Shown: positions 38,580 through 59,194, numbered from the stretch's first letter. The stretch is 64,000 bases of DNA from Pristiophorus japonicus (GCF_044704955.1 NW_027251843.1:620001-684000); one strand, 5' to 3'. Notes: generated by a model from the sequence alone, not told the origin. Numbers and translations are program-made.

Positions 38580-41500
38580 TATTCTCTAATTTCCGGATTA
38601 CTCCCGGTGCCACGAGCTGGTGAATACAGAAACAGGAGGATAGAGCAGATGAATGCGTGGCGGGAGAGATGGTGCAGGCAGGATGCTTTAGTTTCCTGAG
38701 GCATTGGGACCGTTTCTGGGGGAGGTGGGACCTGTACAAACCGGCCGGGTTGCTCCTCAACAGAGCCGGGACCAATATCCTCGAGGGGAGCATTTGCCAG
38801 TGCTGTTGGGGAGGGTTTAAACTAGCTTGGCAGGGGGATGGGAACCTGAGAATAGATTCAGTAGGGAGGGGACTAAAGCTGGAATTAGAAAGCAAAAATA
38901 AAGAAAGTGAGTTTGAAGGAGAGAGGAAACAAGCAGATAAAAAGGGTAAAAAAACAAATTTAAAGGCTCTTTGTCGAAATAACAAAATAGATGAGTTGAC
39001 GGTACAAATAGATACAAATGAATATGATCTGATAGCCATTACAGAGACATGGTTGCAAGGTGACCAGGACTGGGAACTAAATACTCAGGCGTCCTTGACA
39101 ATCCGGAAGAACAGACAGAAAGGAAAAGGAGGTGGTGTTGCTCTGTTGATAAAGGATGGAATCACTGCAATAGTGAGAAATGATATTGGCTCAAATGATC
39201 AGGATGTTGAAACAGTTTGGGTGGAGATAAGGAATAATAAAGGGAAAAAGTCACTGGTGGGCATATCTATCGGCCCCCTAACATTAGCAATTCTGTTGAT
39301 CGGAGTATAAAGCAAGAAATAGTGGAGGATTGTAAAAAGGGAACAGCAATAATTATGGGTGATTTTAACCTCCACATTGATTGGATAAATCAAATTGATC
39401 AGGGTAGTCTTGAGGAAGAGTTCATAGAGTGCATAAGGGACGGGTTCCTTGAGTAGTATGTAATGGAACCAACCAGGGGACAGGCTATCTTAGATCTGGT
39501 CCTGTATAATGAGACAGTATTAATAAACAATCTCCGAGTAAAGGATCCCCTTGGACTGAGTGAGGATAACATGGTTCAATTTCAAATTCAGATTGAGGGT
39601 GAGAAAGATGGATCTCTAACCGGCATACTAAGCTGAAATAATGGAGACTACAAAGGTATGAGGTCAGATTTGGCGAAAGTGGACTGGGAAAATAGATTAA
39701 AGTGTAGGATGGCTGATGAACAATGGCATACATATAAGGAGATATTTCACAACTCTCAAGAAAAATATATTCCAGTGAGGAGGAAATGGTGTGAAAGAAA
39801 AGATAGCCATCCGTGGCTAACTAAAGAAATAAAGGATGGTATCCAATTAAAAACAAGGGCATACAAAGTGGCCAAAACTAGTGGAAGGACAGAAATTGAG
39901 AAACTTTTAAAAGCCTGCAAAGAATGATGAAAAAAATGATTAAGAATGGGAAGATAGACTATGAAAGTAAACTAGCACAAAATATAAAAAGAGATAGCAA
40001 GAGTTTCTATCGGTATATAAAAAGGAAAAGAGTGGCTAAAATAAATGTTGGTCCCTGAGAGGACAAAACCAGGGAATTAGTGATGGGGAACATGGAGATG
40101 GCAGAAACTCTGAACAAATATTTTGTATCAGTCTTTACGGTAGAGGACACTGAGATGAGGAGGAATTTCTTCTCTCAGAGGGTTGTAAATCTGTGGAATT
40201 TGCTGCCTCAGAGAGTTGTGGAGGCTGGGTCATTGAATATATTTAAGACAGAGATAGACAGTTTCTTAACTGACAAGGGACTAAGGGGTTCTGGAGAGCA
40301 AGCAGGGAAGTTGACCTGAGTCCATGATCGGATCGGCCATGATCATATTAAATAGCAAAGCAGGCTCGAGGGGCCATGTGGCCTACTCCTGCTCCTATTT
40401 CTTATGTTCTTAAAATGAGGGGGAGTAGGACTAATTGGGTAATTTTTTCAAAGAGCCGGCACAGGCACGATGGGCCGAATGGCCTCCTTCTGTGCTGTAC
40501 TATTCTAGTCTGTGAGCCCGGTTCACAGTTTTCTCCCGTGTCATTAACAAACGTACAGCTGTGACAACCTCCCTCTTTCACTTCCTCTGTGGGTGAAGTT
40601 TCATTCTTCCGATCTGACAGTCTCTTCAGTTATTTTTTGCACGGGGGATTTCTGCTGTGGTCTGAGTCTCTAATAATAACCGTCCAATCAGGCAGAATAA
40701 CAGCAGCTCGGACCGGCTAGAACAGCGCACCCAGGCTCAGTGCTGACCCTGCAACGTCCTCCTCACCAACATCTGGGCACTTTTGCCAGAAGTGGGAGAG
40801 CTGCCCCACAGACTAGTCAAGCACCAGCCTGACATAGTCCTACTCACAGAATCAGACCTTTCAGCCAATGTCCTACTGCCCCCTCTCCCCGCCCCCGAAT
40901 CCCGTGAACCCTTAAACAGGAACCCTTTTGAAGAAGAGTCTGTTCTGAGATTCTGGCTGTGAGAGATTCAGTGCTGAGAAAACAATCACTATCACTACAG
41001 AAAAAGTACTCGGTAAAATAATGGAACTAAAGGTGGACAAGTCCCCTGGACCTGATGGCCTGCATCCTAGGCTCGTAAATGAAGTGGCTGCAGAGATAGT
41101 GGATGCATTGGTTGCAATCTACAAAAGTTCCCAGAATTCTGGAGAGGTCCCAGCAGATTGGAAAATCGCAAATATAACGCCCCTATTTAAAAAAGAGAGA
41201 CAGAAAGCAGGAAACTATAGACCAGTTAGCCTAACATCTGTGGTTGGGAAAATGCTGGAGTTCATTATTAAGGAAGCAGTAGCAGGACATTTGGAAAAGC
41301 ATAATTCAATCAAGCAGAGTCAGCATGTTTTTATGAAAGGGAAATCATGTTTGACACATTTGTTGGAGTTCTTTGAGGACGTAACGCGCAGGGTGGATAT
41401 GGGGGGACAAGTGGGTGTGGTGTATTTGGATTTCTAGAAGGGATTCAATAAGATGCCACATAAAAGATTACCGCACACGATAAGAGAACATGGGGTTGGT

Positions 41501-42560
41501 GCTAATATATTAGCATGGATAGAGGATTGGCTAGCTCACAGAAAACAGAGAGTCAGGATCAATGGGTCATTTTCTGGTTGGCAAACGGTAACTAGTTGGG
41601 TTTCACAGGGATCGGTGTTGGGGCCTCAACTATTTACAATCTATGGTAATAACTTATATGAAGGGACCGAGTGTAAAAAATCAAAGAGCAAATTATTATT
41701 TAAATGGAGAGAGATTACAAAATGCTGTAACACAGAGGGACCTGGGGGTCCTTGCGCATGAAACACAAAAAGTTAGTATGCAGAGACAGCAAGTAATCAG
41801 GAAGCAAATGGAATGTTGGCCTTAATTGCAAGGGGGATGGAATATAAAAGCAGGGAAGTCCTGCTACATCTGTACAGGGTATTGGTGAGACCGAGAGTAC
41901 TGTGCACAGTTTTGGTCTCCTTATGTAAGGAGGGATATATTTGCACTGGAGGCAATTCAGATAAGGTTCATGAGGTTGATTCCTGAGATGAAGGGGCTGA
42001 CTTATGAAGAAAGTTTGAGCAGGTTAATCAGAACATAAGAAATAGGAACAGGAGTAGGCCATACGGCCCCTCCGCCATTCAATAAGGTCATGGCTGATCT
42101 GATCATGGAGTCAGCTCCATTTCCCCGCCCGCTCCACATATATTCTTTGGAGTTTAGAAGAATGAGAGATGAACTTATTCAAACATATAAGATTCTGAGA
42201 TGGCTCGACAAGGTAATTGCAGAAAGGATGTTTCCAGTCATAGGGGAATCTAGAACTGGGGGCAGAGTTTAAGAATAAGGGGTCGCCCATTGAGAATTGA
42301 GATGAGGAGGAATTTCTTCTCTCAGAGGGTTGTAAATCTGTTCAGTTCTCTGCCCCAGAGAGCTATGGAGGCTGGTCATTGAATATATTTAAGGTGGAGA
42401 TAGACAGATTTTTGAACGATAAGGCAGTAAAGGGTTATGGGGAACGGGTAGGGAAGTGGTGCTGAGCCCAGGATCAGATCAGCCATGATCTTATTGAATG
42501 GCGGAGCAGGCTCGAGGGGCCAAATGGCCGAGTCCTGCTCCTATTTCTTATGTTCTTATG
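38580..42560 (+). mobile_element. CR1 (ORF1 end plus ORF2) interrupted at about 40151-40977 by a foreign cassette
   Basis: HWDRFWGRWDLY (ORF1), IAITETW and GGGVAL (endonuclease). Frame breaks after FVSVFTVEDT and resumes at DKSPGPDGLHPR. 3' tail near 42555. Confidence 0.88.
40510..40720. promoter_or_regulatory. Candidate B-cell enhancer module, copy A (inverted duplicate of 54180-54390)
   Basis: 2 mismatches in 211 bp against the reverse complement of copy B. CAGCTG 40556-40561, TTTCACTTCC 40576-40585, GGGGATTTCT 40644-40653, TGTGGT 40656-40661, CCAAT 40684-40688. Confidence 0.5.
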
Positions 42561-42567
42561 ATTCTTT

Positions 42568-45500
42568 GGCCTAGAATTTCCCCGGTCTAGCACCAGCCAT
42601 TTAGAGGGTTTTGTTCAAATAATCGCGGCCGCCTTGCTTGCGACCCGGGACACGTCATCCACCATTTTTGGTAAGGGCCGTACCGCTGTCGTTGGCAGCA
42701 CACACCTCACAATGTGGATTGTCAGATGGTGACACCAATGCCTGGCTCGAGCCATGACTGTTAATTGAGGCGTTTGCGCTCACCATATGGCCCTGCCCTA
42801 AGCACACGCAGAAAAGCAGGCGTGAAGCAGCCCTGCACAGACGCAGTTGGTGCTTCTTAACGGGGCACACATCTTTCAGGTATGTTTGCATTTAAGCTCT
42901 GGTCTGTTTTAAACAATATATTTTATGGAAGTAGTGGCTTAGTGCAATAAATGTTCAATGTTTTTTCAGTGTGCAGGGAATGCAAGGGGTGCTGCTGGAC
43001 ACATGCAAAGCCTCGGGTGGTAAAGAAAGATCTCTGGAAAGACCGTGAATGCTGGAAATACTCAGCAGGTCAGGCAGCATCCATGGAGAGAGACAGAGTT
43101 AACGTTTCAGCTCAAGATGCTGCCTGACCTGCTGAGTATTTCCAGCATTTACTGCCTTTATTTCCGATTTCCAACTTCTGCTCGCAAAGGGAGGAGGAGG
43201 AAGTGGAAGGAAGGAGGCAACCCAGACAGTCACTTTCTGGCCGGGATATCTGGGATCGAATCATCTGCCTGCAGTCCCAGTGACCACAACCCCAATCCCC
43301 TTTCAACATTAGTCCAACACCTTACTGTCCCTCTGTTACTGACCATCACATCGTCCTCTTGGCCACAATGCTGAAATAAAAGCACCCGCAAACTTTCCAA
43401 TCCAACTTTATCCATATCTGCATCCAATACTATATCAAAAAATCAACTGATCGCCATTAGTCACTGTCTTGTGTGTGTCTTTGCCGATCGTACTGATGTC
43501 ACGCAGTGCTACCCCAGGGGCTGCAGCAGGGCTGCTGGAAGGCTGCTGACTTTCAGTGGGGGACACTGCAGATGGCCTTGCTGGTCGACCTTGAGGAGCG
43601 GGTGGCTGGGAGTGAGAAATCGAGTGATGGTGTGCCTTCACTCTCCTCTCCCTCTGCTTGGTAACCCGTGGGCTGGGCAGGCTGGATTTGGGTGTGTGAA
43701 ATGAGGAAGGGTGGAGTTGTGGTGAGGGGAGGTGGGAAAGCAAGAGCTGCCTGCTTACACCCTGCGCACCTTGTAAATTAGAAGCGATTCTAATTCTGAG
43801 GGGGGAAGTGGGACGTGAGAAGGAGGATAACGTACGAGGATACCAGCATCTTGTATCCTTTTTGCCCCGCCGCTGGCCAGGGGCTCAGCCATGCCCCTGC
43901 CAAGAATGGCCTGCAGCGTCTTCTCCAAGGGGGTGAGGTGAGGCTGGGACTGGGAGGTGTGCCTGGTGTTTGGTACAGATTGTTGGTACGTGAGCGATTG
44001 TGGGGGGCAGGGGGTCGGACATTGAGCAGTGTGCGAGGTTAGTGGTGCAGTTGGTAGGAGACGGCTTTTGAAGATGCTCTCCCTAACCTTGACCAGTGGT
44101 GTGAGGGCATGAAACTTCTGTGGGCAGTGGTGCCAGATGTTGGGGGCGACACTGCATCCAATATTACATCAAAAAGCCCACTAATCCCCCTGTGCATTCC
44201 CTTGGTGTCTGCCTTGTGTGTGTCTTTGCCTGTCCGAGTGCTCCTATGCACTGATACCCCAGGGGATGCAGCAGGGCTGCTGGAAGGCTGCTGACTTTCA
44301 GTTGGGGAGACTGGAGATGGCCTTGGAGGGCGACCTCGAGCAGCTCTGGGCCTGGAAGGCCCGGCTGCGGACTGCATCACCTCGGCCTTGGCGGCAGCAG
44401 TCTGGGCTGGCTGGCTGATAGGCAACAGCATCGACACTGGTGGAGTGGCAGTTGTGGGTGTACGAATGTTGTCATTCTGAGAGAGGGCAGTAGGTTTGTG
44501 CTCCACGGAGCCACTGCCATTCCTCCGGGGGGAGGGGGTGCATCATTCCCGGGGGGCAGATTGCTGGACTGTTGTGACACCCTGCAAGCCCCTTTGAACA
44601 CTGGAATCTGCAGCCATGATGGCAGCAGTCTGAGCTTGCATGGCGTTGGGTGGCTGCTGCTTGTGCTGCAATGGAAGCCGAGACATCGGCCATCAGACGC
44701 TGCATCATGGCTGGGTCCACAAGGGCCCTAATGGAGTGTGCCACCATTCCGTGCTGGAAAGGATGGACTCCAAGCTCTGCGCAAAGCCCTGTGCCAAGCT
44801 GGTGCCCGACTCCTCCGTGCTTCTTGACATTGAGCGCAGGCTTTCTGGCAGGGTTCCTAATGCACCAAGCATTTCATTGTACATACCCATCAGCCTTCAT
44901 CTGTAGCCCGCCCATCGAAATCCTCATCTGAGTCCTCTACACCAGAACCCGTGTGTGACCTCACCCTCCGGCGAGCTGGAACCTGCGCCATCCTTGCCCC
45001 CTGCCCTGGCTGCATGCCCCTCGTGCCCGGTGTCTCACCACGTGCCGATCCCGCCTCTACACTACCCTCTACATTACACGCAGTGTCAGTATCTGAGCTG
45101 GTGGCTGCAAGGGTGAAATCGAGGGACGGTGTGTCTTCACCATCATGTCTTCTGTCTTTTCCACCTCTTGCTCTTCCAACACTGCCTGGCCATATGGCAG
45201 TTCCTGGGTATGTGAAAGGAGAAAGGTACAAGGGGAGGGTTGCAGTGCGGGGAGGGTGGTGATGGGGGGGTCGATGTAAGAGGGGCATGCTTTACACCAT
45301 CTGCAGCTTGTAAATCAGAAGGGATTGTGCGCTGAGAGGGACGTGGCATGTGAGAAGGAGGATTAGGTACGGCCATACCATCATCTTCTGTGGTTCCGCC
45401 CCGCCACTGGCCACGAGCTCAGCGATGGGCACGCCAATGATGGCGAGCACCGTCACCTCCACGGGGATAAGGACATCTGGGCGCGCCTGCCCCCCGCCAC

Positions 45501-46671
45501 TGAGCTCCTGCTGCCTCGGGTTCTGGGCCACCTTGCTCTGCAAGAGAGGGAAGTGTATCGGTGAGTGTGGTGCCCTGTGTTTGGGTGATGCGCCTGTCAC
45601 AGTTGAATAGCTGGCAGTGTGTGCAAGCTGTGAGATGTGGGCGTGAGGCTTGCAGCAGAATCTAAGTGTGTGAGAGTGAGGTGAAGCTGTGAGTGTGGAT
45701 GTTTCCCTTTGTGGGGGAATCTGGAACTAGGGGGCATAGTCTCAGAATAAGCGGACCCCATTTAAGATGGAGATGAGGAGAAATTTCTTCTCTCAGCGGG
45801 TCGTGAATCTTTGGAATTCTCTGCCCCAGAGAGCTGCGGGGGCTGGGTCATTGAGTATATTCAAGGCTGAGATAGACAGATTCTTGAACTACAGGAGAGT
45901 CACGGGTTATGGGGAACAGGCAGCGAAGTGGAGTTGAGGCCAAGATCAAATCAGCCATGTTCTTATTGAATGGTGGACCAGCTCGAGGGGCCGTATGGCC
46001 CACTCCTGCTCCTATTCCATATGTTCTTGTGTATGAGTCCTGATTGCTAGAGATTGTTGGTAGTGGGTGATGGGGGTGTGGTACATTGAGCAATGTGTGA
46101 GACTAGTGGAGCAGTTGGTGGGACACGGCATTTGAAGATGATTTCACCGACCTTGACCACTCTCGTGAGGTCATTGAACATTTGGCGGCACTGCATCCTG
46201 GTCCTCGGGTCCTGGTCTCACTGCCTTCGAAACGTTTGTCTGGTGGAGCCTCCTCGCCCCCTGTGGGTAGAGAACATCTCTCCCCATCTGCACCTCCTCT
46301 CCCAAGGCCTCCAGTGCAGCGCTGGAGGATCTTGGAGCCGGCTCTCTCCCCTGTTGTGTCATCAGTACGTCTTGGTCCAGGTCAGAATGTCTTCCACAGC
46401 TACTTCCAGCACCTGCTCCAGACACATTTCACCTGTCCATTAAGAGGTGCAGGCCAGATTTAACTGGTGCCAGGCTCACAGAACTTTGGGCCCCGGGCGC
46501 TGAGGCCTGTAGCCACTCAACAGCACAGTTAGTGCTGGGTGCACGCACCAATCATGTTGGTTAGCAGGCAGCACAAATTTGGCCTGCTGCCTGCATCGGG
46601 AGCTATGGGCGTGGGTTAATCCCGCATCGTGATCCTCGCGCATGTTTGCAGGGCCGATCGAATTTATCCCC
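42568..46671. mobile_element. Decayed PIF/Harbinger element with a spliced Myb/SANT-like ORF on the minus strand
   Basis: Exon-like pieces REPAPRSSSAALEAL..VLYP (46171-46425), KVAQN.RQQELSGGGQA (45355-45540) and a 3' part homologous to 26092-27030. Ends GAATTTATCCCC. CR1 tail inserted at about 45700-46030. Confidence 0.65.
43048..43149. repeat. Perfect 34-bp inverted repeat (Penelope-associated palindromic terminus)
   Basis: AATGCTGGAAATACTCAGCAGGTCAGGCAGCATC 43048-43081 and its reverse complement 43116-43149. Confidence 0.85.
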
Positions 46672-46722
46672 CATAGAGACCGTGATCATAGAGATTCTGC
46701 ACCGTGTGTGGGAAGGGGATTA

Positions 46723-49700
46723 GAAAATATAGAAAATATAGAAAATAAGTGCAGGAGTAGGCCATTCGGCCCTTCTAGCCTGCACTGCCATTCAATGTGT
46801 TCATGGCTGAACATGCAACTTCAGTACCCCATTCCTGCTTTCTCGCCATACCCCTTGATCCCCCTAGTAGTAAGGACTTCATCAAACTTCTTTTTGAATA
46901 TATTTAGTGAATTGGCCTCAACAACTTTCTGTGGTAGATAATTCCACAGGTTCACCACTCTCTGGGTGAAGAAGTTTCTCCTCATCTCGGTCCTAAATGG
47001 CTTATCCCTTATCCTTAGACTGTGACCCCTGGTTCTGGACTTCCCCAACATTGGGAACATTCTTCCTGCATCTAACCTGTCAAAACCCATCAGAAATTTA
47101 AACATTTCTATGAGGTCCCCTCTAATTCTTCTGAACTCCAGTGAATACAAGCCCGGTTGATCCAGTCTTTCTTGATAGGTCAGTCCTGCCATCCCGGTAA
47201 TCAGTCTGGTGAACCTTCGCTGCACTCCCTCAATAGCAAGAATGTCCTTCCTCAGGTTAGGAGACCAAAACTGTACACAATACTCCCTGCCCCTGTACTC
47301 AAATCCCCTCGCTTTGAAGGCCAACATGCCATTTGCTTTCTTAACCGCCTGCTGTACCTGCATGCCAACCTTCAACGACTGATGTACCATGACACCCAGG
47401 TCTCGTTGCACCTCCCCTTTTCCTAATCTGTCACCATTCAGATAATAGTCTGTCTCTCTGTTTTTACCACCAAAGTGGATAACCTCACATTTATCCACAT
47501 TATACTTCATCTGCCATGCATTTGCCCACTCACCTAACCTATCCAAGTCGCTCTGCAGCCTCACAACATCCTCCTCGCAGCTCACACTGCCACCCAACTT
47601 AGTGTCATCCGCAAATTTGGAGATACTACATTTAATCCCCTGGTCTAAATCATTAATGTACAGTGTAAACAGCTGGGGCCCCAGCACAGAACCTTGCGGT
47701 ACCCCACTAGTCACTGCCTGCCATTCTGAAAAGTACCCACTTACACCGACTCTTTGCTTCCTGTCTGACAACCAGTTCTCAATTCATGTCAGCACACTAC
47801 CCCCAATCCCATGTGCTTTAACTTTGCACATTAATCTCTTGTGTGGGACCTTGTCGAAAGCCTTCTGAAATTCCAAATATACCACATCAACTGGTTCTCC
47901 CTTGTCCACTCTACTGGAAACATCCTCAAAAAATTCCAGAAGATTTGTCAAGCATGATTTCCCTTTCACAAATCCATGCTGACTTGGACCTATCATGTCA
48001 CCTCTTTCCAAATGCGCTGCTATGACATCCTTAAGAATTGATTCCATCATTTTACCCACTACCGATGTCAGGCTGACCGGTCTATAATTCCCTGTTTTCT
48101 TTCTCCCTCCTTTTTTAAAAAGTGGGGTTACATTGACTACCCTCCACTCGATAGAAACTGATCCAGAGTCAATGGAATGTTGGAAAATGACTGTCAATGC
48201 ATCTGCTATTTCCAAGGCCACCTCCTTAAGTACTCTGGGATGCAGTCCATCAGGTCCTGGGGATTTATCGGCCTTCAATCCCATCAATTTCCCCAACACA
48301 ATTTCCCGACTAATAAGGATTTCCCTCAGTTCCTCCTCCTTCTTACTGGACCCTCTGACCCCTTTTATATCCGGAAGGTTGTTTGTGTCCTCCTTAGTGA
48401 ACAGCGAACCGAAGTACTTGTTCAATTGGTCCGCCATTTCTTTGTTCCCCGTTATGACTTCCCCTGATTCTGACTGCAGGGGTCCTACGTTTGTCTTGAC
48501 TAACCTTTTTCTCTTTACATATCGATAAAAACTTTTGCAATCCGTCTTAATGTTCCCTGCAAGCTTCTTCTCGTACTCCATTTTCCCTGCCCTAATCAAA
48601 CCCTTTGTCCTCCTCTGCTGAGTTCTAAATTTCTCCCAGTCCCCGGGTTCACTGCTATTTCTGGCCAATTTGTATGCCACTTCCTTGGCTTTAATACTAT
48701 CCCTGATTTCCCTTGATAGCCACGATTGAGCCACCTTCCCTTTTTTATTTTTATGCCAGAAGGAATGTACAATTGTTGTAGTTCATCCATGCGGTCTCTA
48801 AATGTCTGCCATTGCCCATCCACAGTCAACCCCTTCAGTATCATTCGCCAATCTATCCTGGCCAATTCATGCCTCATACCTTCAAAGTTACCCTTCTTTA
48901 AGTTCTGGACCATGGTCTCTGAATTAACTGTTTCATTCTCCATCCTAATGCAGAATTCCACCATATTATGGTCACTCTTCCCCAAGGGGCCTCGCACAAC
49001 GAGATTGCTAATTAATCCTCTCTCATTACACAACACCCAGTCTAAGATGGCCTCCCCCCTAGTTGGTTCCTTGACATATTGGTCTCAAAAACCATCCCTT
49101 ATGCACTCCAGGAAATCCTCCTCCACCGTATTGCTTCCAGTTTGGTTTGCCCAATCTATGTGCATATTAAAGTCACCCATTATAACTGCTGCACCTTTAT
49201 TGCATGCACCCCTAATTTCCTGTTTGATGCCCTCCCTAACATCACTACTACTGTTTGGAGGTCTGTACACAACTCCCACTAACGTTTTTTGCCCTTTGGT
49301 GTTCTGCAGCTCTACCCATATAGATTCCACATCATCCAAGCTAATGTCCTTCCTAACTATTGCATTAATTTCCTCTTTAACCAGCAATGCTACCCCACCT
49401 CCTTTTATTTTTATTCTATCCTTCCTGAATGTTGAATACCCCTGGATGTTGAGTTCCCAGCCCTGATCATCCTGGAGCCACGTCTCTGTAATGCCAATTA
49501 CATCATATTTGTTAACATCTATTTGCAGTTAATTCATCCACCTTATTACGGATACTCCTTGCATTAAGACACAAAGTCTTCAGGCTTGTTTTTTTAACAC
49601 CCTTTGTCCTTTTAGAATTTTGCTGTACAGTGACCCTTTTTGTTCTTTGCCTTGAGTTTCTCTGCCCTCCAATTTTCCTCATCTCCTTTCTGTCTTTTGC

Positions 49701-51317
49701 TTTTGTCTCCTTTTTGTTTCCCTCTGTCTCCCTGCATTGGTTCCCATCCCCCTGCTATATTAGTTTAACTCCTTCCCAACAGCACGAGCAAATACTCCCC
49801 CGAGGACATTGGTTCCGGTCCTGCCCAGGTGCAGACCGTCCGGTTTGTACTGGTCCCACCTCCCCCAGAACCGGTTCCAATACCCCAGGAATTTGAATCC
49901 CTCCCTGCTGCACCACTGCTCAAGCCACGTATTCATCTGCGCTATCCTGCGATTCCTACTCTGACTAGCACGTGGCACTGGTAGCAATCCCGAGATTACT
50001 ACTTTTGAGGTCCTACTTTTTAATTTAGCTCGTAGCTCCTTAAATTCGTTTCGTAGGTCCTAATCCATTTTTTTACCTATGTCGTTGGTACCAATGTGCA
50101 CCACTGGCTGTTCTTCCTCCCTTTTTAAAATGTCCTGCACCCACTCCGAGACATCCTTGACCCTTGCACCAGGGAGGCAACATACCATCCTGGAGTCTTG
50201 GTTGCGGCCGCAGAAACGCCTATCTATTCCCCTGACAATTGAATCCCCTATCACAATCGCTCTCCCACTCTTTTTCCTGCCCTCCTGTGCAACAGAGCCA
50301 GCCACGGTGCCATGATCTTGGCTGCTGCTGCCCTCCCCTGATGAGTCATCCCCCTCAACAGTACTCAAAGCAGTGTATCTGTTTTGCAGGGGGATGACCA
50401 CAGGGGACCCCTGCACTACCTTCCTTGCTCTGCTCTTCCTGCTGATCTTCCATTCTCAAGCTAGCTGTGGACCCTTTACCTGCGGTACAACCAACTCGCT
50501 ACACGTGCTACTCACGTCATTCTCAGCATCGTGGATGCTCCAGAGTGAATCCACCCTCAGCTCCAACTCCGCAACGCGGTCCGTCAGGAGCTGGAGGTGG
50601 ATACACTTCCCGCACATATAATCGTCAGGGACACTGGAGTCATCCCTGAGTTCCCACATGGACCGAGCTATCCTGCCATGACTTAACCCTTAGATAGGCA
50701 ACAACAATGCTAAAGTTACTCACTGTTATAGAAGAGAAAAAAGAAAAAGTACTCGCCAATCACCAGCCAATCACTTACCCCCTTGGCTGTGACGTCACCT
50801 TTCTGTTTCTTTCTACTTCTTTTTTGCCTTCTCCTTGTAGCTGCACAAGTACGCCTCACCAACGGACCTCCTCGACACTGCTCCCGAGGCTGGGCCCCAG
50901 ACTCCCTGCTGTGCCTTTTATAGGCCTCACCAACGGACCTCCTCGACACTGCTCCCGAGGCTGGGCCCCGGACTCCCTGCTGTGCCTTTTATAGGCCTCA
51001 CCAACGGACCTCCTCGACACTGCTCCCGAAGCTGGGTCCCGGACTCCCTGCTGTGCTTTTTATAGGCCTCACCAACGGACCTCCTCCACGCTGCTCCCGA
51101 GGCTGGGCCCCAGACTCCCTGTTGTGCCTTTTATAGGCCTCTCCACGCACCTCCTCGACGCTGCTCCCAATGCTGGGCCCCGGACTCCCTGCTGTGCCTT
51201 TTATAGGCCTCTCCACGCACCTCCGACGCTGCTCCCGACGCTGGGCCCCGGACTCCCTGCTGTGCCTTTTATAGGCCTCTCCATGCACCTCCGACGCTGC
51301 TCCCGACTGCTGCTGAT
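46723..51317 (-). mobile_element. Near-full-length CR1 LINE (about 4.6 kb): repetitive 5' UTR, ORF1 (zinc finger plus esterase), ORF2 (EN-RT) with frameshifts
   Basis: CGKC..LQLL, VIGDSIVRG, GDFN, SDHN, FADD, 3' tail, putative TSD GATTA (46718-46722, 51318-51322). 5' UTR tandem units at 50850-51310. Confidence 0.95.
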
Positions 51318-51403
51318 GATTAAATGGGTGGCACATTCCATGATAGGGTGGAGTGTACATGGTGTGTGGAAGGGGATTAAATGGGTGGTAGATCCCATGA
51401 TAG

Positions 51404-52130
51404 ACAAAGCTTCTCAACCAACCTGCCCCCGCCACACTGCACTGTCCCTCGATTATTAATATCCACGACAAGGCCTTGGACAAAGTGGACCATATTCCAT
51501 ACCACGCGAATCTACTGGCAACAAGGGCAGACATCAACGTCGAAGTCCAACATCGTCTTCAGTGTGCCAGTGCAGTCTTTGACCGCCTGAGGAAGAGAAT
51601 GTTTAAAGACCAGGACCTCAAACTGGGCACCAAGCTCATGGCCTACAGAGCAGTAGTCATACCTGCCCTTATATATGGCTCAGAGATGTGGACTATATAC
51701 AGCAGACATCTCAAAGCGCTGCAGAAGTACCACCAATGCTGTCTCCACAAGATCCTGCAAATCCATTGGCAATATAGGTGCACCAACGTCAGTGTTCTCA
51801 CTCAGGCAAACATCCCCAGCATCGAAGCATTGACCACAATCGATCAGCTCCGTTGGGTCGGCCACATTGCTTGTATGCCCGATATGAGACTCCCAAAACA
51901 AGCGCTCCAACACGACAAGCGAGCCCCAAGTTGGCAGAGGAAACATTTCAAGGAAACCCTCAAAGCCTCCTTGAAAAAGTGCAACATCCCCTCCGACACC
52001 TGGGAATCCCTGGCCCAAGACTGCTCAAAGTGGAGGAGACATTCGGGAAGGTGCCGAACACCTGAGAACTCATGTTAGTGTGAAAGCAAGTCATCCTCAA
52101 CTCCGAGGGTCTGCCTAAGAAGAGAGAGAG
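51404..52130 (+). mobile_element. RTE-clade LINE 3' fragment
   Basis: TKLMAYRAVVIPALIYGSE.W, QLRWVGH...MPD.RLPKQ, tail ..CTGCCTAAGAAGAG. Confidence 0.9.
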
Positions 52131-52745
52131 TGTACATGTGTGTGTGGGAGGAGATTAAATGGGTGGTAGGGTCCATGATAGGGTGGGGAGTACATGGTGT
52201 GTGTGGGAGGAGATTAAATGGGTGGTAGGGTCCATGATAGGGTGGGGTGTACATGGTGTGTGGGAGGAGATTAAATGGGTGGTAGAGTCCATGATAGGGT
52301 GGGGAGTACATAGTGTGTGTGGGAGGAGATTAAATGGGTGGTAGAGTCCATGATAGGGTGGGGAGTACATGGTGTGTGTGGGAGGAGATTAAATGGGTGG
52401 TAGGGTCCATGATAGGGTGGGGAGTACATAGTGTGTGTGGGAGGAGATTAAATGGGTGGTAGAGTCCATGATAGGGTGGGGAGTACATAGTGTGTGTGGG
52501 AGGAGATTAAATGGGTGGTAGAGTCCATGATAGGGTGGGGAGTACATAGTGTGTGTGGGAGGAGATTAAATGGGTGGTAGGGTCCATGATAGGGTGGGGA
52601 GTACATGGTGTGTGTGGGAGGAGATTAAATGGGTGGTAGAGTCCATGATAGGGTGGGGTGTACATGGTGTGTGGGAGGGGATTAAATGGGTGGTAGGGTT
52701 CATGATAGGGTGGGGTGTACATGGTGTGTGGGAGGGGATTAAATG
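52131..52745. repeat. G-rich minisatellite, ~58-60-bp unit (GTGTGTGGGAGGAGATTAAATGGGTGGTAGGGTCCATGATAGGGTGGGGAGTACAT)
   Basis: About 10 copies. Further units at 51318-51403 and a partial unit at 46704-46722. Confidence 0.95.
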
Positions 52746-53164
52746 AGCTAATGGGTAAAAGACCTTTTATCATTCTAGTTATTTGATATTTTGAAGAAAA
52801 ATAAAATCAGGGAGAGTTCAGCTCGCTCCCCCTTGACCTTGGAAATTACGGTTGGGTGAAAGAAAGAAAGAGACAGACTTGCATTTATATAGCGCCTTTC
52901 ACATCCTCAGGATGACAAAGCACTTTACAGCCAATGAAGTACTTTTTGAAGTGTAGTCACTGCTGTAATGTAGGAAACGTGGCAGCCCATTTGTGCACAG
53001 CAAGCTCCCACAAACAGCACTGTGATAATGAGCTGATAATCTGTTTCAGGGATGATGGTTGAGGGTGAAAGAGGAAAGTGTGTCCTATTCTCCTGAACAG
53101 TCAGTCCATGGGTTTTTTATTAATTCATGGAATGTGGGCGTTGCTGGCAAGGCCGGCATTTATT

Positions 53165-54160
53165 ATAAGAACATAAGAAATAGGAGCAGGAGTAGGTCAT
53201 TTGGCCCCTCGAGCCTGCTCCGCCATTTAATAAAAAGCAAGGGAGCCAGTACTGAGCCCTGCGGAACCACACTGGATACAGCCTTCCAGTAAGAAATACA
53301 CCCATCAACCATTACCCTTTGCTAACTGCCTCTGAACCAATTTTGAATCCAACTTGTCACTTTGACCTGGATCCCATGGGCTATTACTTTTGTGACCAGT
53401 CTGCCATGTGGGACCTTCTCAAAAGCCTTTTTAAAATCCATATACATTGCATCATACGCACTGCCCTCAGCGACTCTCCTCAAAAAATTGAATCAAGTTA
53501 TTCAGACACGACCTTCCCTGAACAAATCCATGCTGACTGTCCTTGATTAATCCGTGTTTTGTCAAATGAAGATTCCTCCAATTCCGCCCCCGAGGTTAGG
53601 CTGACTGACCTGTAGTGACTCGATCTATCCCTTGCTCCATTTTTAAACAAAGGTACCACGTTTGCAGTCCTCCAGTCCTCCGGTACCTGGGATTGCAATG
53701 TCAGCATCGCCCCTCTCGGCCAGCTCGGTCAGTAGTGGTGCTACCGAGACACTCTTGGTGATGGACAGTGAAGTCCCCCACCCAGAGTACATTCTGTGCC
53801 CTTGCTACTCTCAGTGCTTCTTCCAAGTGGTGTTCAACATGGAGGAGCACTGATTCATCAGTTGAGGGAGGGCAGGAGGTGGTAATCAGCAGGAGGTTTC
53901 ATTGCCCGTGTTTGACCTGATGCCATGAGACTTCATGGGGTCCGGACTCAATGTTGAGGACTCCCAGGGCCACTCCCTCCCGACTGTGTACCACTGAGCT
54001 GCCACCTCGGGTGATGGAGGAGTCTGGGACATTGGCTGAAAGGTATGATTCTGTGAGTAGGACTATGTCAGGCTGGTGCTTGACTAGTCTGTGGGGCAGC
54101 TCTCCCACTTTTGGCACAAGTCCCCAGATGTTGGTGAGGAGGATGTTGCAGGGTCAGCAC
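53165..54160 (-). mobile_element. Mosaic of CR1 fragments and another LINE endonuclease fragment
   Basis: VPEDWRTANVVPLFK; PKVGELPHRLVKHQPDIVLLTESYL. Confidence 0.75.
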
Positions 54161-54179
54161 TGAGCCTGGGTCCACTGTC

Positions 54180-54390
54180 CTAGCCGGTCCGAGCTGCTGT
54201 TATTCTGCCTGATTGGACAGTTATTATTAGAGACTCAGACCACAGCAGAAATCCCCCGTGCAAAAAATAACTGAAGAGACTGTCAGATCGGAAGAATGAA
54301 ACTTCACCCACAGAGGAAGTGAAAGAGGGAGGTTGTCACAGCTGTACGTTTGTTAATGACACGGGAGAAAACTGTGAACCGCGCTCACAG
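54180..54390. promoter_or_regulatory. Candidate B-cell enhancer module, copy B (about 2.7 kb upstream of V-kappa)
   Basis: Non-TE sequence with EICE GGAAGTGAAA 54315-54324, E-box CAGCTG 54339-54344, RUNX ACCACA, kB-like AGAAATCCCC and ATTGG. Function is inferred. Confidence 0.5.
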
Positions 54391-54489
54391 CCTCGAATCT
54401 TACAGCACAGAAGGAGGCCATTCGGCCCATCGTGCCTTTGCCGGCTCTTTCAAAGAATTACCCAATTAGTCCCACTCCTCACCAGTTAA

Positions 54490-56115
54490 AGAACATAAGA
54501 AATAGGAGCAGGAGTAGGCCTCATGGCCCCTCGAGCCTGCTCCGCTATTTAATACGATCATGGCCGATACGATCATGGATTCAGCTCCACATCCCTCCCC
54601 GCTCCCCATAACCCCTTATTCCCATGTCGGTTAAGAAACTGTCTATCTCTGTCTTAAATTTATTCAACGACCCAGCTTCCACAGCTCTCTGAGGCAGCCA
54701 ATTCCACAGATTTACAACCCTCAGAGAGAAGAAATTCCTCTAATCTATTTTAAATGGGAGTCCCCTTATTCTAAGATCATGCCCTCTAGTTCAATTCTCC
54801 CCCTCAGTGGAAACATCCTCTCTGCATCCATTTTGTCAAGCCCCCTCATAATCTGATACGTTTCAATAAGATCACCTCTCATTCTTCTGAATTCGAATGA
54901 GCAGATGCCCAACCTACTCAACTTTTCCTCATAAATCAACCGCCTCATCTCCTGAATCAACCTAATGAACCTTCTCTGACCTGCCTCCAAAGCAAGTATA
55001 TCCTTTCTTAAATATGGAATCCAAAATTAGTGTGTCCACACCAATACCCTGTATAGCTGTAGCAAGACTTCCCTGCTTTTACACTCCGTCCCCTTTGCAA
55101 TAAAGGCCAAGATTCCATTGGCCTTCCTGATCACTTACTGTATCTGCATACTAACATTTTGTGTTTCATGCACAAGTACCCGTTGCACCACAGCACTTTG
55201 CAATCTTTCTCCATTTAAATAATAACTTGCTCTTTGATTTTTTTTTCTGCCAAAGTGCATGACCTCACACTTTCCAACATTGTACACCATCTGCCAAATT
55301 TTTGCCCACTCACTGCCTACGTCCTTTTGCAGGTTTTTTGTGTCCTCCTCACACATTGCTTTTCCTCCCATCTTTGTATCGTCAGAAAACGTGGCTACAT
55401 TATATTCGGTTCCATCATCCAAGTCGTTAATATATATTGTAAATAGTTGGGGTCCCCGCACTGATCCCTGCGGCACCCCACTAGTTACTGATTCCCAACC
55501 TGAAAATGAACCATTTTTGCAGACTCTCTGTTTTCTGTTAGTTAGCCAATCGTCTATCCATGCTAACATATTACCCCCAACCCTGTGAATTTTTATCTTG
55601 TGCAGTAACCTCTTACGTGGCATTTTGTCAAATGCCTTCTGGAGGTCCAAATACACCACATCCACTGGTTCCCCTTTATCCACCCTGCTCATTGCATCCT
55701 CAAAGAATTCTGCACATTTATCAAACATGACTTCCCCTTCATAATTCCATGCTTACTCTGCCTGACTGAATTATGATTATCTAAATGTCCTGCTACTGCT
55801 TCTTTAATAATGGACTCCAACATTTTCCCAACCACAGATGTTAGGTTAATTGGTCTATAGTTTCCTGCTTTTTGTCTGCCTCCTTTTGTAAATAGGGGCG
55901 TTACATTTGCAGTTTTACAATCTGCTGGGACCTCCCAAGAATACAGGGAATTTTGGTAAATTACAACCAATGAATCCACTGTCCCTGCCGTGACTTTTCA
56001 TAAGACCCTGGGATGCAAGCCATCAGATCCAGGGGATTTATTCGCCTTTAGTCCCATGATCTTACTGAGTACCACCTCCTTAGTGATTGTGATTGTGTTA
56101 AGTTCCTCGCCCCCG
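54490..56115 (-). mobile_element. CR1 ORF2 3' half with tail
   Basis: NYRPINLTSVVGK, GVPQGS, FSDDTK, MRGDLIETY. Confidence 0.92.
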
Positions 56116-56151
56116 TAACCCAGCAAATTGTTCCTTTTCAAGTATATATCC

Positions 56152-56320
56152 AGTAGGAAGGAGCCATGTTTCCTGGGCCCTATTGGATGTCCAATAGAAA
56201 GGAGCCATCTTTCCTATTCCCTATTGGAGGACCAATAGGAAGGATCCATGTTTCCTGGTCCCTGTTGGGGGACCAATAGGAAGGAGCCATGTTTCCTGAG
56301 CCCTATTGGAGGACCAGTGG
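56152..56320. repeat. About 4 copies of a ~43-bp unit containing CTATTGG-N4-CCAATAG palindromes
   Basis: AGGAAGGAGCCATGTTTCCTG.GCCCTATTGG....CCAAT repeated. Confidence 0.85.
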
Positions 56321-56895
56321 GACATGGAGTCCATGGTCGACGTGGAGTGCGGACCCTTCCTGTTGTAAATGTGGGATCGTCGGACCTGATCCCAGTAAAA
56401 ACACCCTGACCTGGAGCGGGGCCATGGAAGGGGAAGGAGAGGGGAAGGGATTCGAAGATGTTCTGAGCGGACAGGATGGGGCAGTGGCTCAGACCCTGTC
56501 CTGTCGCTCCAGCTCACACTGATGCGGTGAGGATCTCCTCTCTCTGCTGGGCCTTCATGAAATGAACTTTCTGTCCAAACCGGTCCCCACTGAGAATAGG
56601 CCCTTAATTGGGCAATAAACAGCAGGTGTACTGAGAGAGGCCAAGGGATGGCCACTGTGGGGAATGGGGCCTTACTCCAGGAGAAGGCATGCTCTGGGGT
56701 CAAGGGTTAACATCCATTGGTGGGGTAGGGCACAGGGAGGTTTACTCTGCATTTCAGTGTGCTGCACCTGGGAGTCTGTGGGGGAGAGGGAGAAAGAGGT
56801 AGGATGGAGAGATAGAGAGGGAGGGATGGAGAGAGAGAGGGGGAATGGAGAGAGAGAGGAAGGGAGAGGGAGGTGAAGAGGGAGGGAGAGAAGAA

Positions 56896-56993
56896 GAGGA
56901 AGTGAAATGTGCTGACGTGGCTTTCTCTGGGTGAAGACATTTACATACTGAGGGATGGGCAGTGAGACTCTCTCAGGCTGCAGGTTTATAAAG
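56896..56993 (+). promoter_or_regulatory. V-kappa promoter: Ets-IRF composite element, CRE-like site, variant octamer, TATA box
   Basis: GGAAGTGAAA 56898-56907, TGACGT near 56913, ATTTACAT 56939-56946 (1 mismatch to ATTTGCAT), TATAAA 56987-56992, about 60 nt before the leader ATG. Confidence 0.75.
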
Positions 56994-57051
56994 CAGGGCC
57001 CAGTGAAGGGCAGTTTATCAGTAAGCAGGCACAGGGACAGGAGGAGACACC

Positions 57052-57100
57052 ATGATTTCACCCATCCAGCTGATCTGGCCTCTGGCATTCTGCGTCACAG
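57052..57100 (+). CDS. IGKV: Ig kappa-type light chain leader exon (MISPIQLIWPLAFCVT-G)
   Basis: ATG in Kozak-like context (gacaccATG), 49-nt hydrophobic signal-peptide exon ending in phase 1 at AG|GTACCA (donor 57101). Closely resembles shark type III/NS4 kappa leaders as I recall them. Confidence 0.92.
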
Positions 57101-57287
57101 GTACCAATCTCTCTCCTTCCACGTTTAATATCTCCCTGCTGTCGATTTCTGTCCAACTCTACTGACCAGTGATTGAAGGGCAAATGCTGACACCAGAGGA
57201 GAGCTCAGTGTCTCGAGCAATCTCTCATTTTACAGCGTCTTTCTGTGACAGTGCTTACATCACTTTCTTTCCCCATTTCCCCCTCAG

Positions 57288-57586
57288 GTATCAGTGGGGA
57301 CATCATCATGACCCAGTCTCCCCCGGTGCTGTCAGTGAGTGAGGAACAGACTGCAACCATCACCTGTACCGCCAGTGCATCCGTTAGCAATGATGTTCAA
57401 TGGTACCAGCAAAAAGCCGGGCAGAAACCCACTCTGCTGATTTATAAAGCAGTATCTCATTTCACTGGAACCTCCGATCGCTTCACCGGCAGTTACCAGT
57501 CCAACACGTTCACCCTGAGCATCAGCAACGTGCAGAGCGAGGATGTTGCAGACTATTACTGTGGGCAAGATAACAGCTTCCCTCTA
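57288..57586 (+). CDS. IGKV: Ig kappa-type light chain V exon, germline (unrearranged), open frame
   Basis: Polypyrimidine acceptor ...ccccatttccccctcag|GT, in phase with the leader. Encodes GISG-DIIMTQSPPVLSV..TATITC..WYQQKAGQKPTLLIY..DRFTGS..FTLSISNVQSEDVADYYC-GQDNSFPL with all V-set hallmarks (Cys23, Trp, D-x-A-x-YYC) and no stop codons. Confidence 0.96.
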
Positions 57587-57614
57587 CACTGTGATACACA
57601 GCCGTACAAAAACC
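57587..57614 (+). other. V recombination signal sequence, 12-bp spacer (12-RSS)
   Basis: Heptamer CACTGTG 57587-57593, spacer ATACACAGCCGT (12 nt), perfect nonamer ACAAAAACC 57606-57614. V-12RSS with J-23RSS is the kappa-type polarity. Confidence 0.96.
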
Positions 57615-58695: not shown

Positions 58696-58697
58696 GA

Positions 58698-59012: not shown

Positions 59013-59021
59013 AGGGACGGA

Positions 59022-59060
59022 GGATAGTGTACAGCCACTGCACTGGAAGCTGTCACTGTG
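59022..59060 (-). other. J recombination signal sequence, 23-bp spacer (23-RSS)
   Basis: Top strand GGATAGTGT (59022-59030, 6/9 to GGTTTTTGT), 23-nt spacer 59031-59053, CACTGTG 59054-59060 (consensus CACAGTG on the minus strand) abutting J. Confidence 0.88.
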
Positions 59061-59095
59061 GCTCACGTTCGGTAAAGGAACCAAGCTCAGACTGA
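59061..59095 (+). CDS. IGKJ: Ig kappa-type light chain J segment (LTFGKGTKLRL)
   Basis: FGxG motif, preceded by the 23-RSS and followed by a consensus phase-1 donor GTAAGT at 59096. Confidence 0.95.
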
Positions 59096-59194
59096 GTAAG
59101 TAAACCCCAATCCTCCGTTATTAACACTTTAAATACTGAATCTTTCTAAGACACAAATGTTGAATATGCGAAGGTGTTAGTTTACATATGATTA

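What the first reader, a model, noticed from the sequence alone, without database searches (positions are those of the whole stretch)
40510..54390. 211-bp B-cell enhancer-like module duplicated in inverted orientation and more conserved than its flanks
Seen: 40510-40720 and the reverse complement of 54180-54390 differ at only 2 of 211 positions. By my manual count the co-duplicated TE-derived flanks differ more (about 8/153 on one side, about 11/95 on the other). The core holds GGAAGTGAAA, CAGCTG, TGTGGT, GGGGATTTCT and CCAAT. Established: the Ets-IRF (PU.1/IRF4/8) element with E2A E-boxes is the core logic of mammalian Ig light-chain 3' enhancers. Inference: an undescribed upstream enhancer of shark kappa clusters, kept by selection or gene conversion, possibly one per cluster.
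Basis: partly seen in the sequence, partly recalled or inferred. Interest (0 to 1): 0.8.

Follow-up and report, generated by a model that had tools for sequence, protein, structure and literature searches.

The report
Motif-dense module paired upstream of shark V-kappa
A 242-base stretch of non-transposon DNA, rich in lymphocyte transcription-factor motifs, sits as an inverted pair upstream of a shark kappa light-chain gene; it is a reasonable but unproven candidate regulatory element, and its near-identity is explained more simply by gene conversion than by selection.

Summary
Observation confirmed. 40160-40873 and 54027-54740 form a 714-nt ungapped inverted repeat with 46 mismatches. The 211-nt core has 2, the left flank 36/350, the right flank 8/153 (scan-permutation p about 5e-4). 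The contrast with the left flank is strong; with the right flank it is marginal (p 0.01-0.02).

The core is the centre of a ~242-nt transposon-free island between a CR1-like LINE tail and a 5'-truncated repeat that looks like a LINE endonuclease start. It is not a high-copy repeat: summed contig depth is ~1.4e3, against 1e5-3e6 in the flanks and 2.5e2-1e3 over the V region. It is not that repeat's own 5' end. It was not seen at 85% identity or more in three other species, two of which hold the V promoter region.

One germline L-V-J kappa unit lies 2.7 kb from arm 2. The island carries 5 of 9 lymphoid motif classes, unique in the 64 kb. Its EICE 10-mer matches the mouse lambdaB site and recurs in the V promoter.

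The scan found the same kind of inverted pair before: ten first-reader notes elsewhere in this genome, most naming light-chain or kappa genes (all unchecked).

Verdict: a cluster-linked candidate regulatory module, probably homogenised by gene conversion. Enhancer function is untested, and "one per cluster" is wrong here (two per V).

The parts
40160..40873 (+). Arm 1 of the inverted segmental duplication (714 nt)
   Evidence: ungapped, 46 mismatches against arm 2
54027..54740 (-). Arm 2 of the inverted segmental duplication
40510..40720 (+). Core, copy 1 (2 of 211 differ from copy 2); the mismatch-free stretch is 40519-40680
54180..54390 (-). Core, copy 2, 2.66 kb upstream of the V leader ATG
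40506..40747 (+). TE-free island of arm 1 (about 242 nt), mapped from arm 2 by the register p to 94900-p
   Evidence: boundaries transferred through
54153..54394 (-). TE-free island of arm 2. The bin 54161-54347 has summed depth 1436 (X1) and 1.4-3.9 (X5, X6, X14), against 1e5-3e6 in neighbouring bins
   Evidence: loose ends of more than 1000 contigs at 54395; X5 and X6 contigs stop at 54151/54152; X6 loose end behind 54155
40160..40412 (+). Left flank part 1: 3' end of a CR1/L2-like LINE (end of ORF2, 3'UTR, ATGTTCTT-type tail). Co-duplicated: the arms share 12 derived states
40413..40509 (+). Left flank part 2: the tail of a second LINE or SINE, ending in one ATTCTAGT octamer
   Evidence: loose-end consensus ...ATAGAATCATA at 54395
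40748..40873 (+). Right flank: 5'-truncated high-copy repeat whose ORF (..HQPDIVLLTES..) resembles the N-terminus of a LINE AP endonuclease. In arm 1 homology stops at 40873 and a different LINE follows from about 40979
   Evidence: Exo_endo_phos E=0.083, profile positions 4-47 only; weak
53902..54152 (-). The same repeat continuing in arm 2 (84-aa open frame)
40576..40585 (-). Ets-IRF composite element GGAAGTGAAA, arm 1
54315..54324 (+). Ets-IRF composite element GGAAGTGAAA, arm 2, on the same strand as V
40556..40561 (.). E-box CAGCTG (arm 2: 54339-54344)
40644..40661 (+). kappaB-like GGGGATTTCT (one mismatch to GGGRNWYYCC) followed by RUNX TGTGGT (arm 2: 54239-54256)
40670..40688 (+). MEF2 consensus CTAATAATAA followed by CCAAT, which on the other strand reads the NF-Y Y-box CTGATTGG (arm 2: 54209-54230)
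   Evidence: and sequence
54395..56140 (-). LINE (RVT_1) separating arm 2 from the low-copy V-upstream DNA
56898..56907 (+). The identical GGAAGTGAAA in the V promoter, about 150 nt before the ATG. An octamer-like ATTTACAT lies at 56939-56946 and TTTATAAA at 56985-56992
57052..57100 (+). Leader exon of V-kappa
   Evidence: read by eye (ATG ... ACAG|gt)
57288..57614 (+). V exon (V-set, E=5e-17) followed by a 12-RSS: heptamer CACTGTG at 57587, nonamer ACAAAAACC at 57606
59054..59095 (+). J-kappa: heptamer CACTGTG, then ..TFGKGTKLRL.., then a gtaagt splice donor

Best explanation
The core is the centre of a ~242-nt island of low-copy, non-transposon DNA that belongs to the repeat unit of this species' kappa light-chain clusters. 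Before a LINE inserted next to it, the island lay about 0.9 kb upstream of the V leader. Island and TE neighbours were then copied in inverted orientation. The island most likely acts as a cluster-linked cis-regulatory module (an enhancer or upstream activating element). It would be read in B cells by an Ets/IRF pair (PU.1 or SpiB with IRF4 or IRF8) on GGAAGTGAAA, an E-protein on CAGCTG, MEF2 on CTAATAATAA, RUNX on TGTGGT and NF-Y on CTGATTGG, and it would act on the V promoter, which carries the same Ets-IRF 10-mer. Its near-identity between the arms is best explained by gene conversion between the inverted copies. The tract would begin at the LINE-tail/core junction and run at least 200 nt, perhaps to the end of homology. 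Any selection on the binding sites would be a secondary contributor. Shown: the anatomy, the low copy number, the co-duplication, the step in divergence, the motif content and the linkage to one V-J unit. Inferred: factor binding, enhancer activity, conversion as the homogenising process, and restriction of all copies to Ig clusters.
For: Low-copy island between TEs: depth 1436 in X1, against 1e5-3e6 for the flanks and 250-1080 over the V region. The island is therefore about as abundant as V-kappa, within a factor of 1.3 to 5. The arms share 12 derived states in the flanking LINE, so they were duplicated together. There is a sharp step in divergence at 40510-40519 (10.3% to 2.5%) and a 162-nt clean run. 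Both differences in the core are at hypermutable CpG sites, as expected if they arose after a recent homogenisation. The core holds 5 of 9 lymphoid motif classes. Only the two arms reach 5 among 2552 windows, and none of 20000 Markov simulations does. MEF2 was a class I added before looking for it. GGAANNGAAA occurs three times in 64 kb: the two arms and the V promoter, always as GGAAGTGAAA. That 10-mer is the core of the mouse lambdaB PU.1 site (PMC4872103 Table 1). A genuine germline L-V-RSS and J lie 2.7 kb away. Ten other notes of the scan describe such a module or its inverted pair in the same genome, most beside light-chain or kappa genes (unchecked).
Against: There is no functional datum of any kind. 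The motif set was partly chosen after seeing the sequence, and only the EICE and MEF2 hits are individually improbable. The 13-mer shared with the V promoter lies next to a GA-rich microsatellite, and the local alignment score is within the shuffle range. The core was not seen at 85% or more in contigs of three other species, although two of them carry the V promoter and leader region. A deeply conserved enhancer would be expected there. Core versus right flank is only p=0.01-0.02, and BIC prefers a two-block model. A TE fragment on the right is thus almost as well kept as the core, which argues against selection as the cause. Arm 1 has no V, J or C near it. Linkage of the other genomic copies to Ig clusters rests on unchecked notes and on a rough depth ratio.
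Confidence: 0.45

Rival explanations
1. Inert leftover. The island is ordinary once-unique DNA caught in an old inverted segmental duplication. A neutral gene-conversion tract, or regional rate variation, left its centre almost identical. The motifs are coincidental and nothing is regulated.
For: BIC prefers two blocks. The right-hand TE fragment is only 4-5% diverged and is nearly as well kept as the core. A 162-nt stretch with no change at all is typical of a conversion tract, not of selection on 6-10-nt sites. The core is absent at 85% or more in three other species. An earlier follow-up in this genome judged an inverted mirror copy beside a kappa cluster to be a decaying leftover (s1-874485). 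If the clusters were amplified recently, all clusters inherit one ancestral pattern, so recurrence is not independent evidence. Recent amplification is suggested by the V-upstream contig, which is collapsed at depth 270 against 5-10 for single LINE variants.
Against: The motif density is unique in 64 kb and was never reached in 20000 simulations. The exact lambdaB-type EICE is shared with the V promoter. CpG observed/expected is 0.67 in the core, against 0.40 in the window and 0-0.11 in the right flank. That suggests a hypomethylated or protected state, though 8 CpGs are too few for significance.
Confidence: 0.35
2. Low-copy mobile or captured sequence. The island is a fragment of an unclassified, lineage-specific repeat (or a captured promoter) that spread in this species independently of Ig genes and lies near this cluster by chance.
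For: Summed depth of the core in X1 is about 5 times that of the V-upstream DNA, so there are more copies than two per cluster of this V-upstream type. It was seen only in the source species.
Against: No terminal inverted repeats or target-site duplications. No Rfam match. No meaningful ORF. Both arms share the same junctions with both TE flanks, so here it moved as part of a segmental duplication and not on its own. Its depth is comparable to that of the V exon bins (517-1080). The scan's other notes place it beside light-chain or kappa genes.
Confidence: 0.12
3. Purifying selection alone, without gene conversion, keeps the whole 211 nt unchanged because every base matters, as in an ultraconserved-type enhancer.
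For: The left edge of high identity coincides within about 4 nt with the TE/non-TE junction.
Against: With 5-10% neutral divergence, about 7-15 changes are expected in the roughly 150 nt outside the motif cores, and 2 are seen. All 8 CpGs are retained. The sequence is missing at 85% or more in related species, which is the opposite of ultraconservation. The right edge of high identity (40720) falls about 25 nt inside the island, not at its border.
Confidence: 0.05
4. Assembly artefact: one locus was assembled twice.
For: The region is repeat-rich and the core is nearly identical.
Against: The copies are inverted and 13 kb apart. Their flanks differ at 44 positions. The TE neighbours beyond the homology are different. 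The same layout is reported in other windows.
Confidence: 0.03

Closest known systems
Mouse Ig lambda enhancers E-lambda2-4 and E-lambda3-1 (lambdaB PU.1/IRF4 site plus lambdaA MEF2 site)
   Same: The identical 10-mer GGAAGTGAAA, as in the lambdaB oligonucleotide (PMC4872103). A MEF2 consensus lies 85 nt away and an E-box 15 nt away. It is associated with a light-chain gene.
   Different: The mouse enhancers lie downstream of C; this module lies upstream of V and occurs as an inverted pair. There is no sequence homology beyond the motifs. No binding or activity data exist. That lambdaA binds MEF2 is from my own knowledge and was not checked in a paper here.
Mammalian Ig kappa 3' enhancer (PU.1/IRF4 composite element with an adjacent E2A E-box)
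   Same: An Ets-IRF composite element with a nearby CAGCTG E-box, beside a kappa-type V-J unit.
   Different: Position (5' of V rather than 3' of C), duplication, and the restriction to one lineage seen here. The functional definition is untested. The mammalian architecture is cited from established knowledge, not from a tool.
Arm-to-arm gene conversion in inverted segmental duplications (for example the palindromes of primate sex chromosomes)
   Same: Inverted arms 13 kb apart, with a tract of near-identity inside older, more diverged homology. The remaining differences are at CpG sites.
   Different: The arms here are tiny (0.7 kb) and the homogenised tract is only 0.2-0.36 kb. No population or multi-copy data were available to show conversion directly.
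Inverted mirror copies beside kappa clusters of this same genome (scan note s1-874485 and the inverted-pair notes)
   Same: The same genome and the same theme of inverted duplication next to V-J-C kappa clusters. The modules in those notes are described with the same motif list and a length of 241 nt.
   Different: In this window no mirrored V, J or C was found, and the arm spacing is larger (13.9 kb against 7.9-11.7 kb). The other notes are unchecked and their sequences could not be read.

Membership tests
Lymphoid Ets-IRF (EICE)-type immunoglobulin enhancer | Composite element GGAANNGAAA | tested here: met
   an exact match in each arm. There are only 3 matches in 64 kb; the third is in the V promoter.
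Lymphoid Ets-IRF (EICE)-type immunoglobulin enhancer | Co-occurring sites for partner factors (E2A E-box, MEF2, RUNX, NF-kB) | tested here: met
   the CAGCTG, CTAATAATAA and TGTGGT consensus sites are present. The kappaB site fails the strict consensus by one base. The motif set was partly post hoc.
Lymphoid Ets-IRF (EICE)-type immunoglobulin enhancer | Physical linkage to an Ig gene | tested here: met
   arm 2 lies 2.66 kb 5' of a germline L-V-RSS, with J 2 kb further on. Linkage of the other genomic copies rests only on unchecked notes.
Lymphoid Ets-IRF (EICE)-type immunoglobulin enhancer | Conservation in related species | tested here: not met
   the core bin has depth 1.4-3.9 in X5, X6 and X14 at 85% or more, while X5 and X14 cover the V promoter and leader at 115-650. 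Contigs show presence rather than absence, so this is a weak negative.
Lymphoid Ets-IRF (EICE)-type immunoglobulin enhancer | B-cell-specific open chromatin and enhancer marks, factor occupancy, reporter activity | not testable with these tools
   No chromatin or expression data could be reached.
Dispersed transposable-element family | High copy number with unrelated flanks | tested here: not met
   depth is two to three orders of magnitude below the TE flanks; no third copy in the window.
Dispersed transposable-element family | Terminal repeats, target-site duplication, coding capacity or an RNA-gene head | tested here: not met
   no consistent TIR, no Rfam hit, only short ORFs without a family.
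5' UTR or internal promoter of the adjacent LINE | The sequence continues into the core in other copies of that LINE family | tested here: not met
   contigs of the family stop at 54151/54152, and in X6 they continue with a different consensus behind 54155.
Inverted segmental duplication with gene conversion | Shared junctions and shared derived substitutions in both arms | tested here: met
   the TE/core junctions are identical and the arms share 12 derived states against 7 other family copies.
Inverted segmental duplication with gene conversion | A block of much higher identity inside older homology | tested here: met
   10.3% against 2.5%, with the break at 40519, and a 162-nt clean run (p=2e-4).
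Inverted segmental duplication with gene conversion | Arms of one locus closer to each other than to the homologous arms of other loci | not testable with these tools

The most novel reading that the evidence does not exclude
The island is a true B-cell enhancer built on the same Ets-IRF, E-protein and MEF2 logic as mammalian light-chain enhancers, carried as an inverted pair in every kappa minicluster of this shark. This would be the first cis-regulatory element defined for a cartilaginous-fish Ig cluster. It would show that this enhancer grammar is either about 450 million years old or has been reinvented. It would also give a handle on how dozens of independent clusters are activated one at a time.
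Probability: 0.3. Interest if true: 0.75.

Novelty: new variant of a known kind. Interest (0 to 1): 0.52.

Why it matters
Sharks carry their antibody genes as dozens of small V-J-C clusters. How a B cell switches on one cluster and not the others is an open question. To my knowledge, and in the paper searches run here, no enhancer has been defined for any shark light-chain cluster. A short, low-copy, cluster-linked module carrying the mammalian light-chain enhancer motifs is a concrete object to test by ATAC-seq, reporter assays and EMSA with shark PU.1, IRF4 and E2A. If it is inert, it is still a clean small example of a gene-conversion tract inside an inverted duplication, and a warning that identity higher than the flanks need not mean selection.

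Tried and rejected
1. The core as the 5'UTR or promoter of the adjacent LINE. This was my first guess. It was rejected because contigs of that family end at 54151/54152 and continue differently in X6, and because the core depth is 100 to 1000 times lower.

2. The core as a copy of the V promoter. The best local alignments (scores 21-28) lie within the shuffle range (mean 20.9, maximum 30).

3. A MITE or LTR-like element. The short inverted repeats near the ends are crossed rather than nested, and there is no target-site duplication.

4. A structured RNA gene. No Rfam match at E of 1 or less.

5. An RSS-flanked, D-like palindrome at 40510-40528 (CTGTGAGCCCGGTTCACAG). By eye the nonamers do not fit, so I dropped it.

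6. A mirrored V, J or C near arm 1. Motif scans and stop-to-stop ORFs show none in the window.

7. A mirrored copy of the 41-nt repeat at 56150-56316. None found.

8. CpG decay as the cause of the flank divergence. Only 8 of the 44 flank differences are at CpG sites, and 25 are transversions.

An exact 38-mer scan of metagenome contigs found nothing. The findings search by sequence was blank.

10. The big protein searches were not used, because no claim here rests on them. The V gene was searched as the single V exon only; leader and V exon were not joined.


Full report
**Observation**

The + strand of 40510-40720 and the reverse complement of 54180-54390 differ at two positions, 40518 and 40681. 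Homology extends without any gap over 714 nt, from 40160-40873 to 54027-54740, with 46 mismatches.
- The right flank, 40721-40873, has 8/153.
- The last ~97 nt on the left have 12, and the whole left flank has 36/350.
- Permuting mismatch positions gives p=4.6e-4 for a 211-nt window with 2 or fewer mismatches, and p=2.2e-4 for the 162-nt clean run.

A change-point analysis qualifies this. The dominant step is at 40519, with 10.3% divergence to the left and 2.5% to the right. BIC slightly prefers this two-block model (341.8) over a three-block model (343.8). The additional contrast between the core and the right flank is only p about 0.014-0.02.

**Anatomy**

The left flank is made of two TE tails. 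40160-40412 is the 3' end of a CR1/L2-like LINE that has many other copies in the window. 40413-40509 is a second LINE or SINE tail ending in one ATTCTAGT octamer. In an alignment with seven other family copies, the two arms share 12 derived states. The TE was therefore already in place when the segment was duplicated, and the flanks are truly co-duplicated.

The right flank carries an open frame (..HQPDIVLLTESYL..GGSSVVHSREGVALGV..). It resembles the N-terminus of a LINE AP endonuclease only weakly (Exo_endo_phos E=0.083, profile positions 4-47). It is nevertheless clearly a high-copy repeat in four species.

Contigs laid on 53600-59200 fix the TE borders.
- More than 1000 contigs per run break at 54395, with a loose-end consensus ending ...ATAGAATCATA, which is the octamer tail.
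- Contigs of the right-hand repeat stop at 54151/54152 (X5, X6).
- In X6 they continue behind 54155 with a different consensus.

The TE-free island is therefore 54153-54394, equal to 40506-40747 in arm 1, about 242 nt. My first idea, that the core is the 5'UTR of that repeat, is refuted.

Beyond the homology the arms have different neighbours. Another LINE follows arm 1 from about 40979, and 1.6 kb of other TE sequence lies before 40160. The duplication is thus old enough to have been eroded by later insertions, and it is not an assembly duplicate.

**Copy number and species range (contigs only, so rough)**

Summed word depth per bin:

| Region | X1 (source species) | X5 | X6 | X14 |
|---|---|---|---|---|
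| Core bin 54161-54347 | 1436 | 1.4 | 1.9 | 3.9 |
| Flanking TE bins | 1e5-3e6 | high | high | high |
| V-upstream bins | 244-324 | see below | about 0-23 | see below |
| V exon bins | 517 and 1080 | see below | about 0.5-290 | see below |

- Single LINE-variant contigs in X1 have depth 5-10.
- One collapsed 389-nt V-upstream contig in X1 has depth 270 and 7 differences. This suggests dozens of near-identical clusters.
- X5 covers V-upstream and V at depths of 115-440, with contigs at about 91-95% identity over the V-upstream, promoter and leader region.
- X14 covers the promoter and leader at 358-652, at about 85% identity.

Three conclusions follow. The core is not a high-copy dispersed repeat. 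Its abundance is of the order of V-kappa, 1.3 to 5 times. It was not detected at 85% or more in three other species. The last point is a weak negative, because contigs show presence better than absence.

**Ig context**

A single germline kappa-type unit is present.
- Promoter with TATA at 56985.
- Leader exon at 57052-57100.
- V exon at 57288-57586 (V-set E=5e-17; searched as the V exon alone, not joined to the leader).
- A 12-RSS with heptamer at 57587 and nonamer at 57606.
- J at 59061-59095 behind a heptamer at 59054.

No C exon and no second V or J were found in the window.

Arm 2 ends 2.66 kb before the ATG. About 1.75 kb of that distance is a LINE with an RVT_1 domain. Before that insertion the island lay about 0.9 kb from the leader. 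Arm 1 lies 16.3 kb upstream with only TEs around it. "One per cluster" does not hold here: there are two copies for one V.

The scan's own notes describe the same kind of module, or its inverted pair, elsewhere in this genome. The pairs have spans of 7.9-11.7 kb and the modules are 241 nt long. Most notes place them beside light-chain or kappa genes, and one places the pair between a pseudo-C-kappa and a V-kappa. I could not read those sequences, so I use the notes as leads only. They suggest that the pair is part of the cluster repeat unit. If the clusters were amplified recently, as the collapsed V-upstream contig suggests, then every cluster inherits one ancestral pattern. The recurrence is then not independent evidence for selection.

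**Motifs**

GGAANNGAAA occurs three times in 64 kb, against 2.8 expected by chance. All three are GGAAGTGAAA, and they lie in the two arms and in the V promoter at 56898. This 10-mer is the core of the mouse lambdaB PU.1 site (PMC4872103, Table 1).

The core scores 5: EICE, E2A, RUNX, NF-Y and MEF2 (CTAATAATAA at 40670). Only the two arms reach 5 among 2552 sliding windows, and none of 20000 Markov simulations does.

There are caveats. The set is partly post hoc. The kappaB-like site misses the strict consensus by one base. The 13-mer shared with the promoter abuts a GA-rich microsatellite, and the local alignment scores lie within the shuffle range.

CpG observed/expected is 0.67 in the core, 0.40 in the window and 0-0.11 in the right flank. 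That is suggestive of hypomethylation, but it rests on only 8 CpGs.

**Why the core is so alike**

Selection on 6-10-nt sites cannot explain a 162-nt stretch without a single change when the co-duplicated DNA is 5-10% diverged. About 7-15 changes would be expected outside the motif cores. The two changes present are both at CpG sites, the fastest-mutating class. The TE fragment on the right is also well kept, at 4-5%.

All of this fits a gene-conversion tract that begins at the LINE-tail/core junction and runs at least 200 nt, possibly to the end of homology at 40873. An open, hypomethylated regulatory element could itself be the initiation site for conversion, so conversion and function are not exclusive.

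The flank differences include many transversions (25 of 44) and come in short clusters, at 40291-40320, 40412-40427 and 40500-40509. Some patches resemble other subfamilies of the same LINE. Ectopic micro-conversion from other TE copies may therefore inflate the flank divergence. I could not test this.

**Literature**

Three full-text searches and a look into Malecek et al. 2008 (PMC2435157) found no described enhancer of a shark Ig light-chain cluster. That paper invokes a promoter-enhancer holocomplex for shark IgH clusters only as a hypothesis.

**Verdict**

- The island is real, low-copy and linked to a V-kappa, and it is the most motif-dense lymphoid-type segment in the window.
- That it is an enhancer remains an inference, which I put at about 0.45 including any upstream regulatory role.
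- The main rival is an inert island with a neutral conversion tract, at about 0.35.
- "Kept by selection" is not needed, and "one per cluster" is wrong here.
- It was not found in the other species sampled at 85% identity or more.
- The scan has met the same element in several other windows of this genome.

**Limits**

No shark genome collection was available for a copy census.

Noticed in passing
window 56898-56992: The V-kappa promoter carries the same GGAAGTGAAA as the module, about 150 nt before the ATG. An octamer-like ATTTACAT follows at 56939 and TTTATAAA at 56985. A GA-rich microsatellite (56790-56899) runs right up to the Ets-IRF site.
   Followed up: partly
window 56150-56316: A 41-nt tandem repeat (4.1 copies, 84% matches) lies at the border between the LINE and the V-upstream DNA. 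Its unit CCAATAGGAAGGAGCCATGTTTCCTGGGCCCTATTGGAGGA is partly palindromic and holds CCAAT/ATTGG and GGAA/TTCC motifs. There is no other copy in the window.
   Followed up: partly
window 59100-64000: No C-kappa exon follows J within the remaining 4.9 kb. The stretch is filled with LINE fragments (RT-like ORFs at 60.9-63.9 kb), so the J-C intron is either unusually long or C lies beyond the window.
   Followed up: no
window 2100-4800 (-) and 11100-14700 (+): A second, larger inverted pair: two copies of a retroelement with long pol-type open frames (up to 445 aa), 84-92% alike in several collinear blocks (I2, I4, I12, I15, I17; ORFs). I read the gag, protease, RT and integrase-like content by eye; no family scan was run.
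   Followed up: no
window 46700-50700 (-): A long LINE copy lies between the two arms, with large open frames: Exo_endo_phos E=8e-13 at 49088-49528, an RT-like frame at 46824-47783 (by eye, not scanned), and upstream frames at 50063-50455. It probably accounts for part of the larger arm spacing here (13.9 kb against 7.9-11.7 kb in other windows).
   Followed up: partly
window 50853-51306 and 52132-52745: Two minisatellites lie between the arms: 71-nt units x 6.5 (93% matches) and 59-nt units x 10.5 (96% matches).
   Followed up: no
window 8743-9640, 23553-24103, 25523-25774, 27010-27300, 29160-30114: A series of further tandem arrays with periods of 9, 20, 41, 9-15 (GGA-rich), 16 and 33 nt, in a GC-rich stretch that reaches GC 0.60 at 26-28 kb.
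   Followed up: no
window 40510-40528: The core begins with a 19-nt near-palindrome, CTGTGAGCCCGGTTCACAG. One of the two arm differences (40518) is at its centre. Its meaning is unknown.
   Followed up: no
window 58181-58323 and 58275-58461: The V-J intervening DNA holds a 64-nt repeat (2.2 copies) and a bin of high contig depth (1.8e5 in X1, 1.3e5 in X5). A repeat has therefore been inserted between V and J.
   Followed up: no
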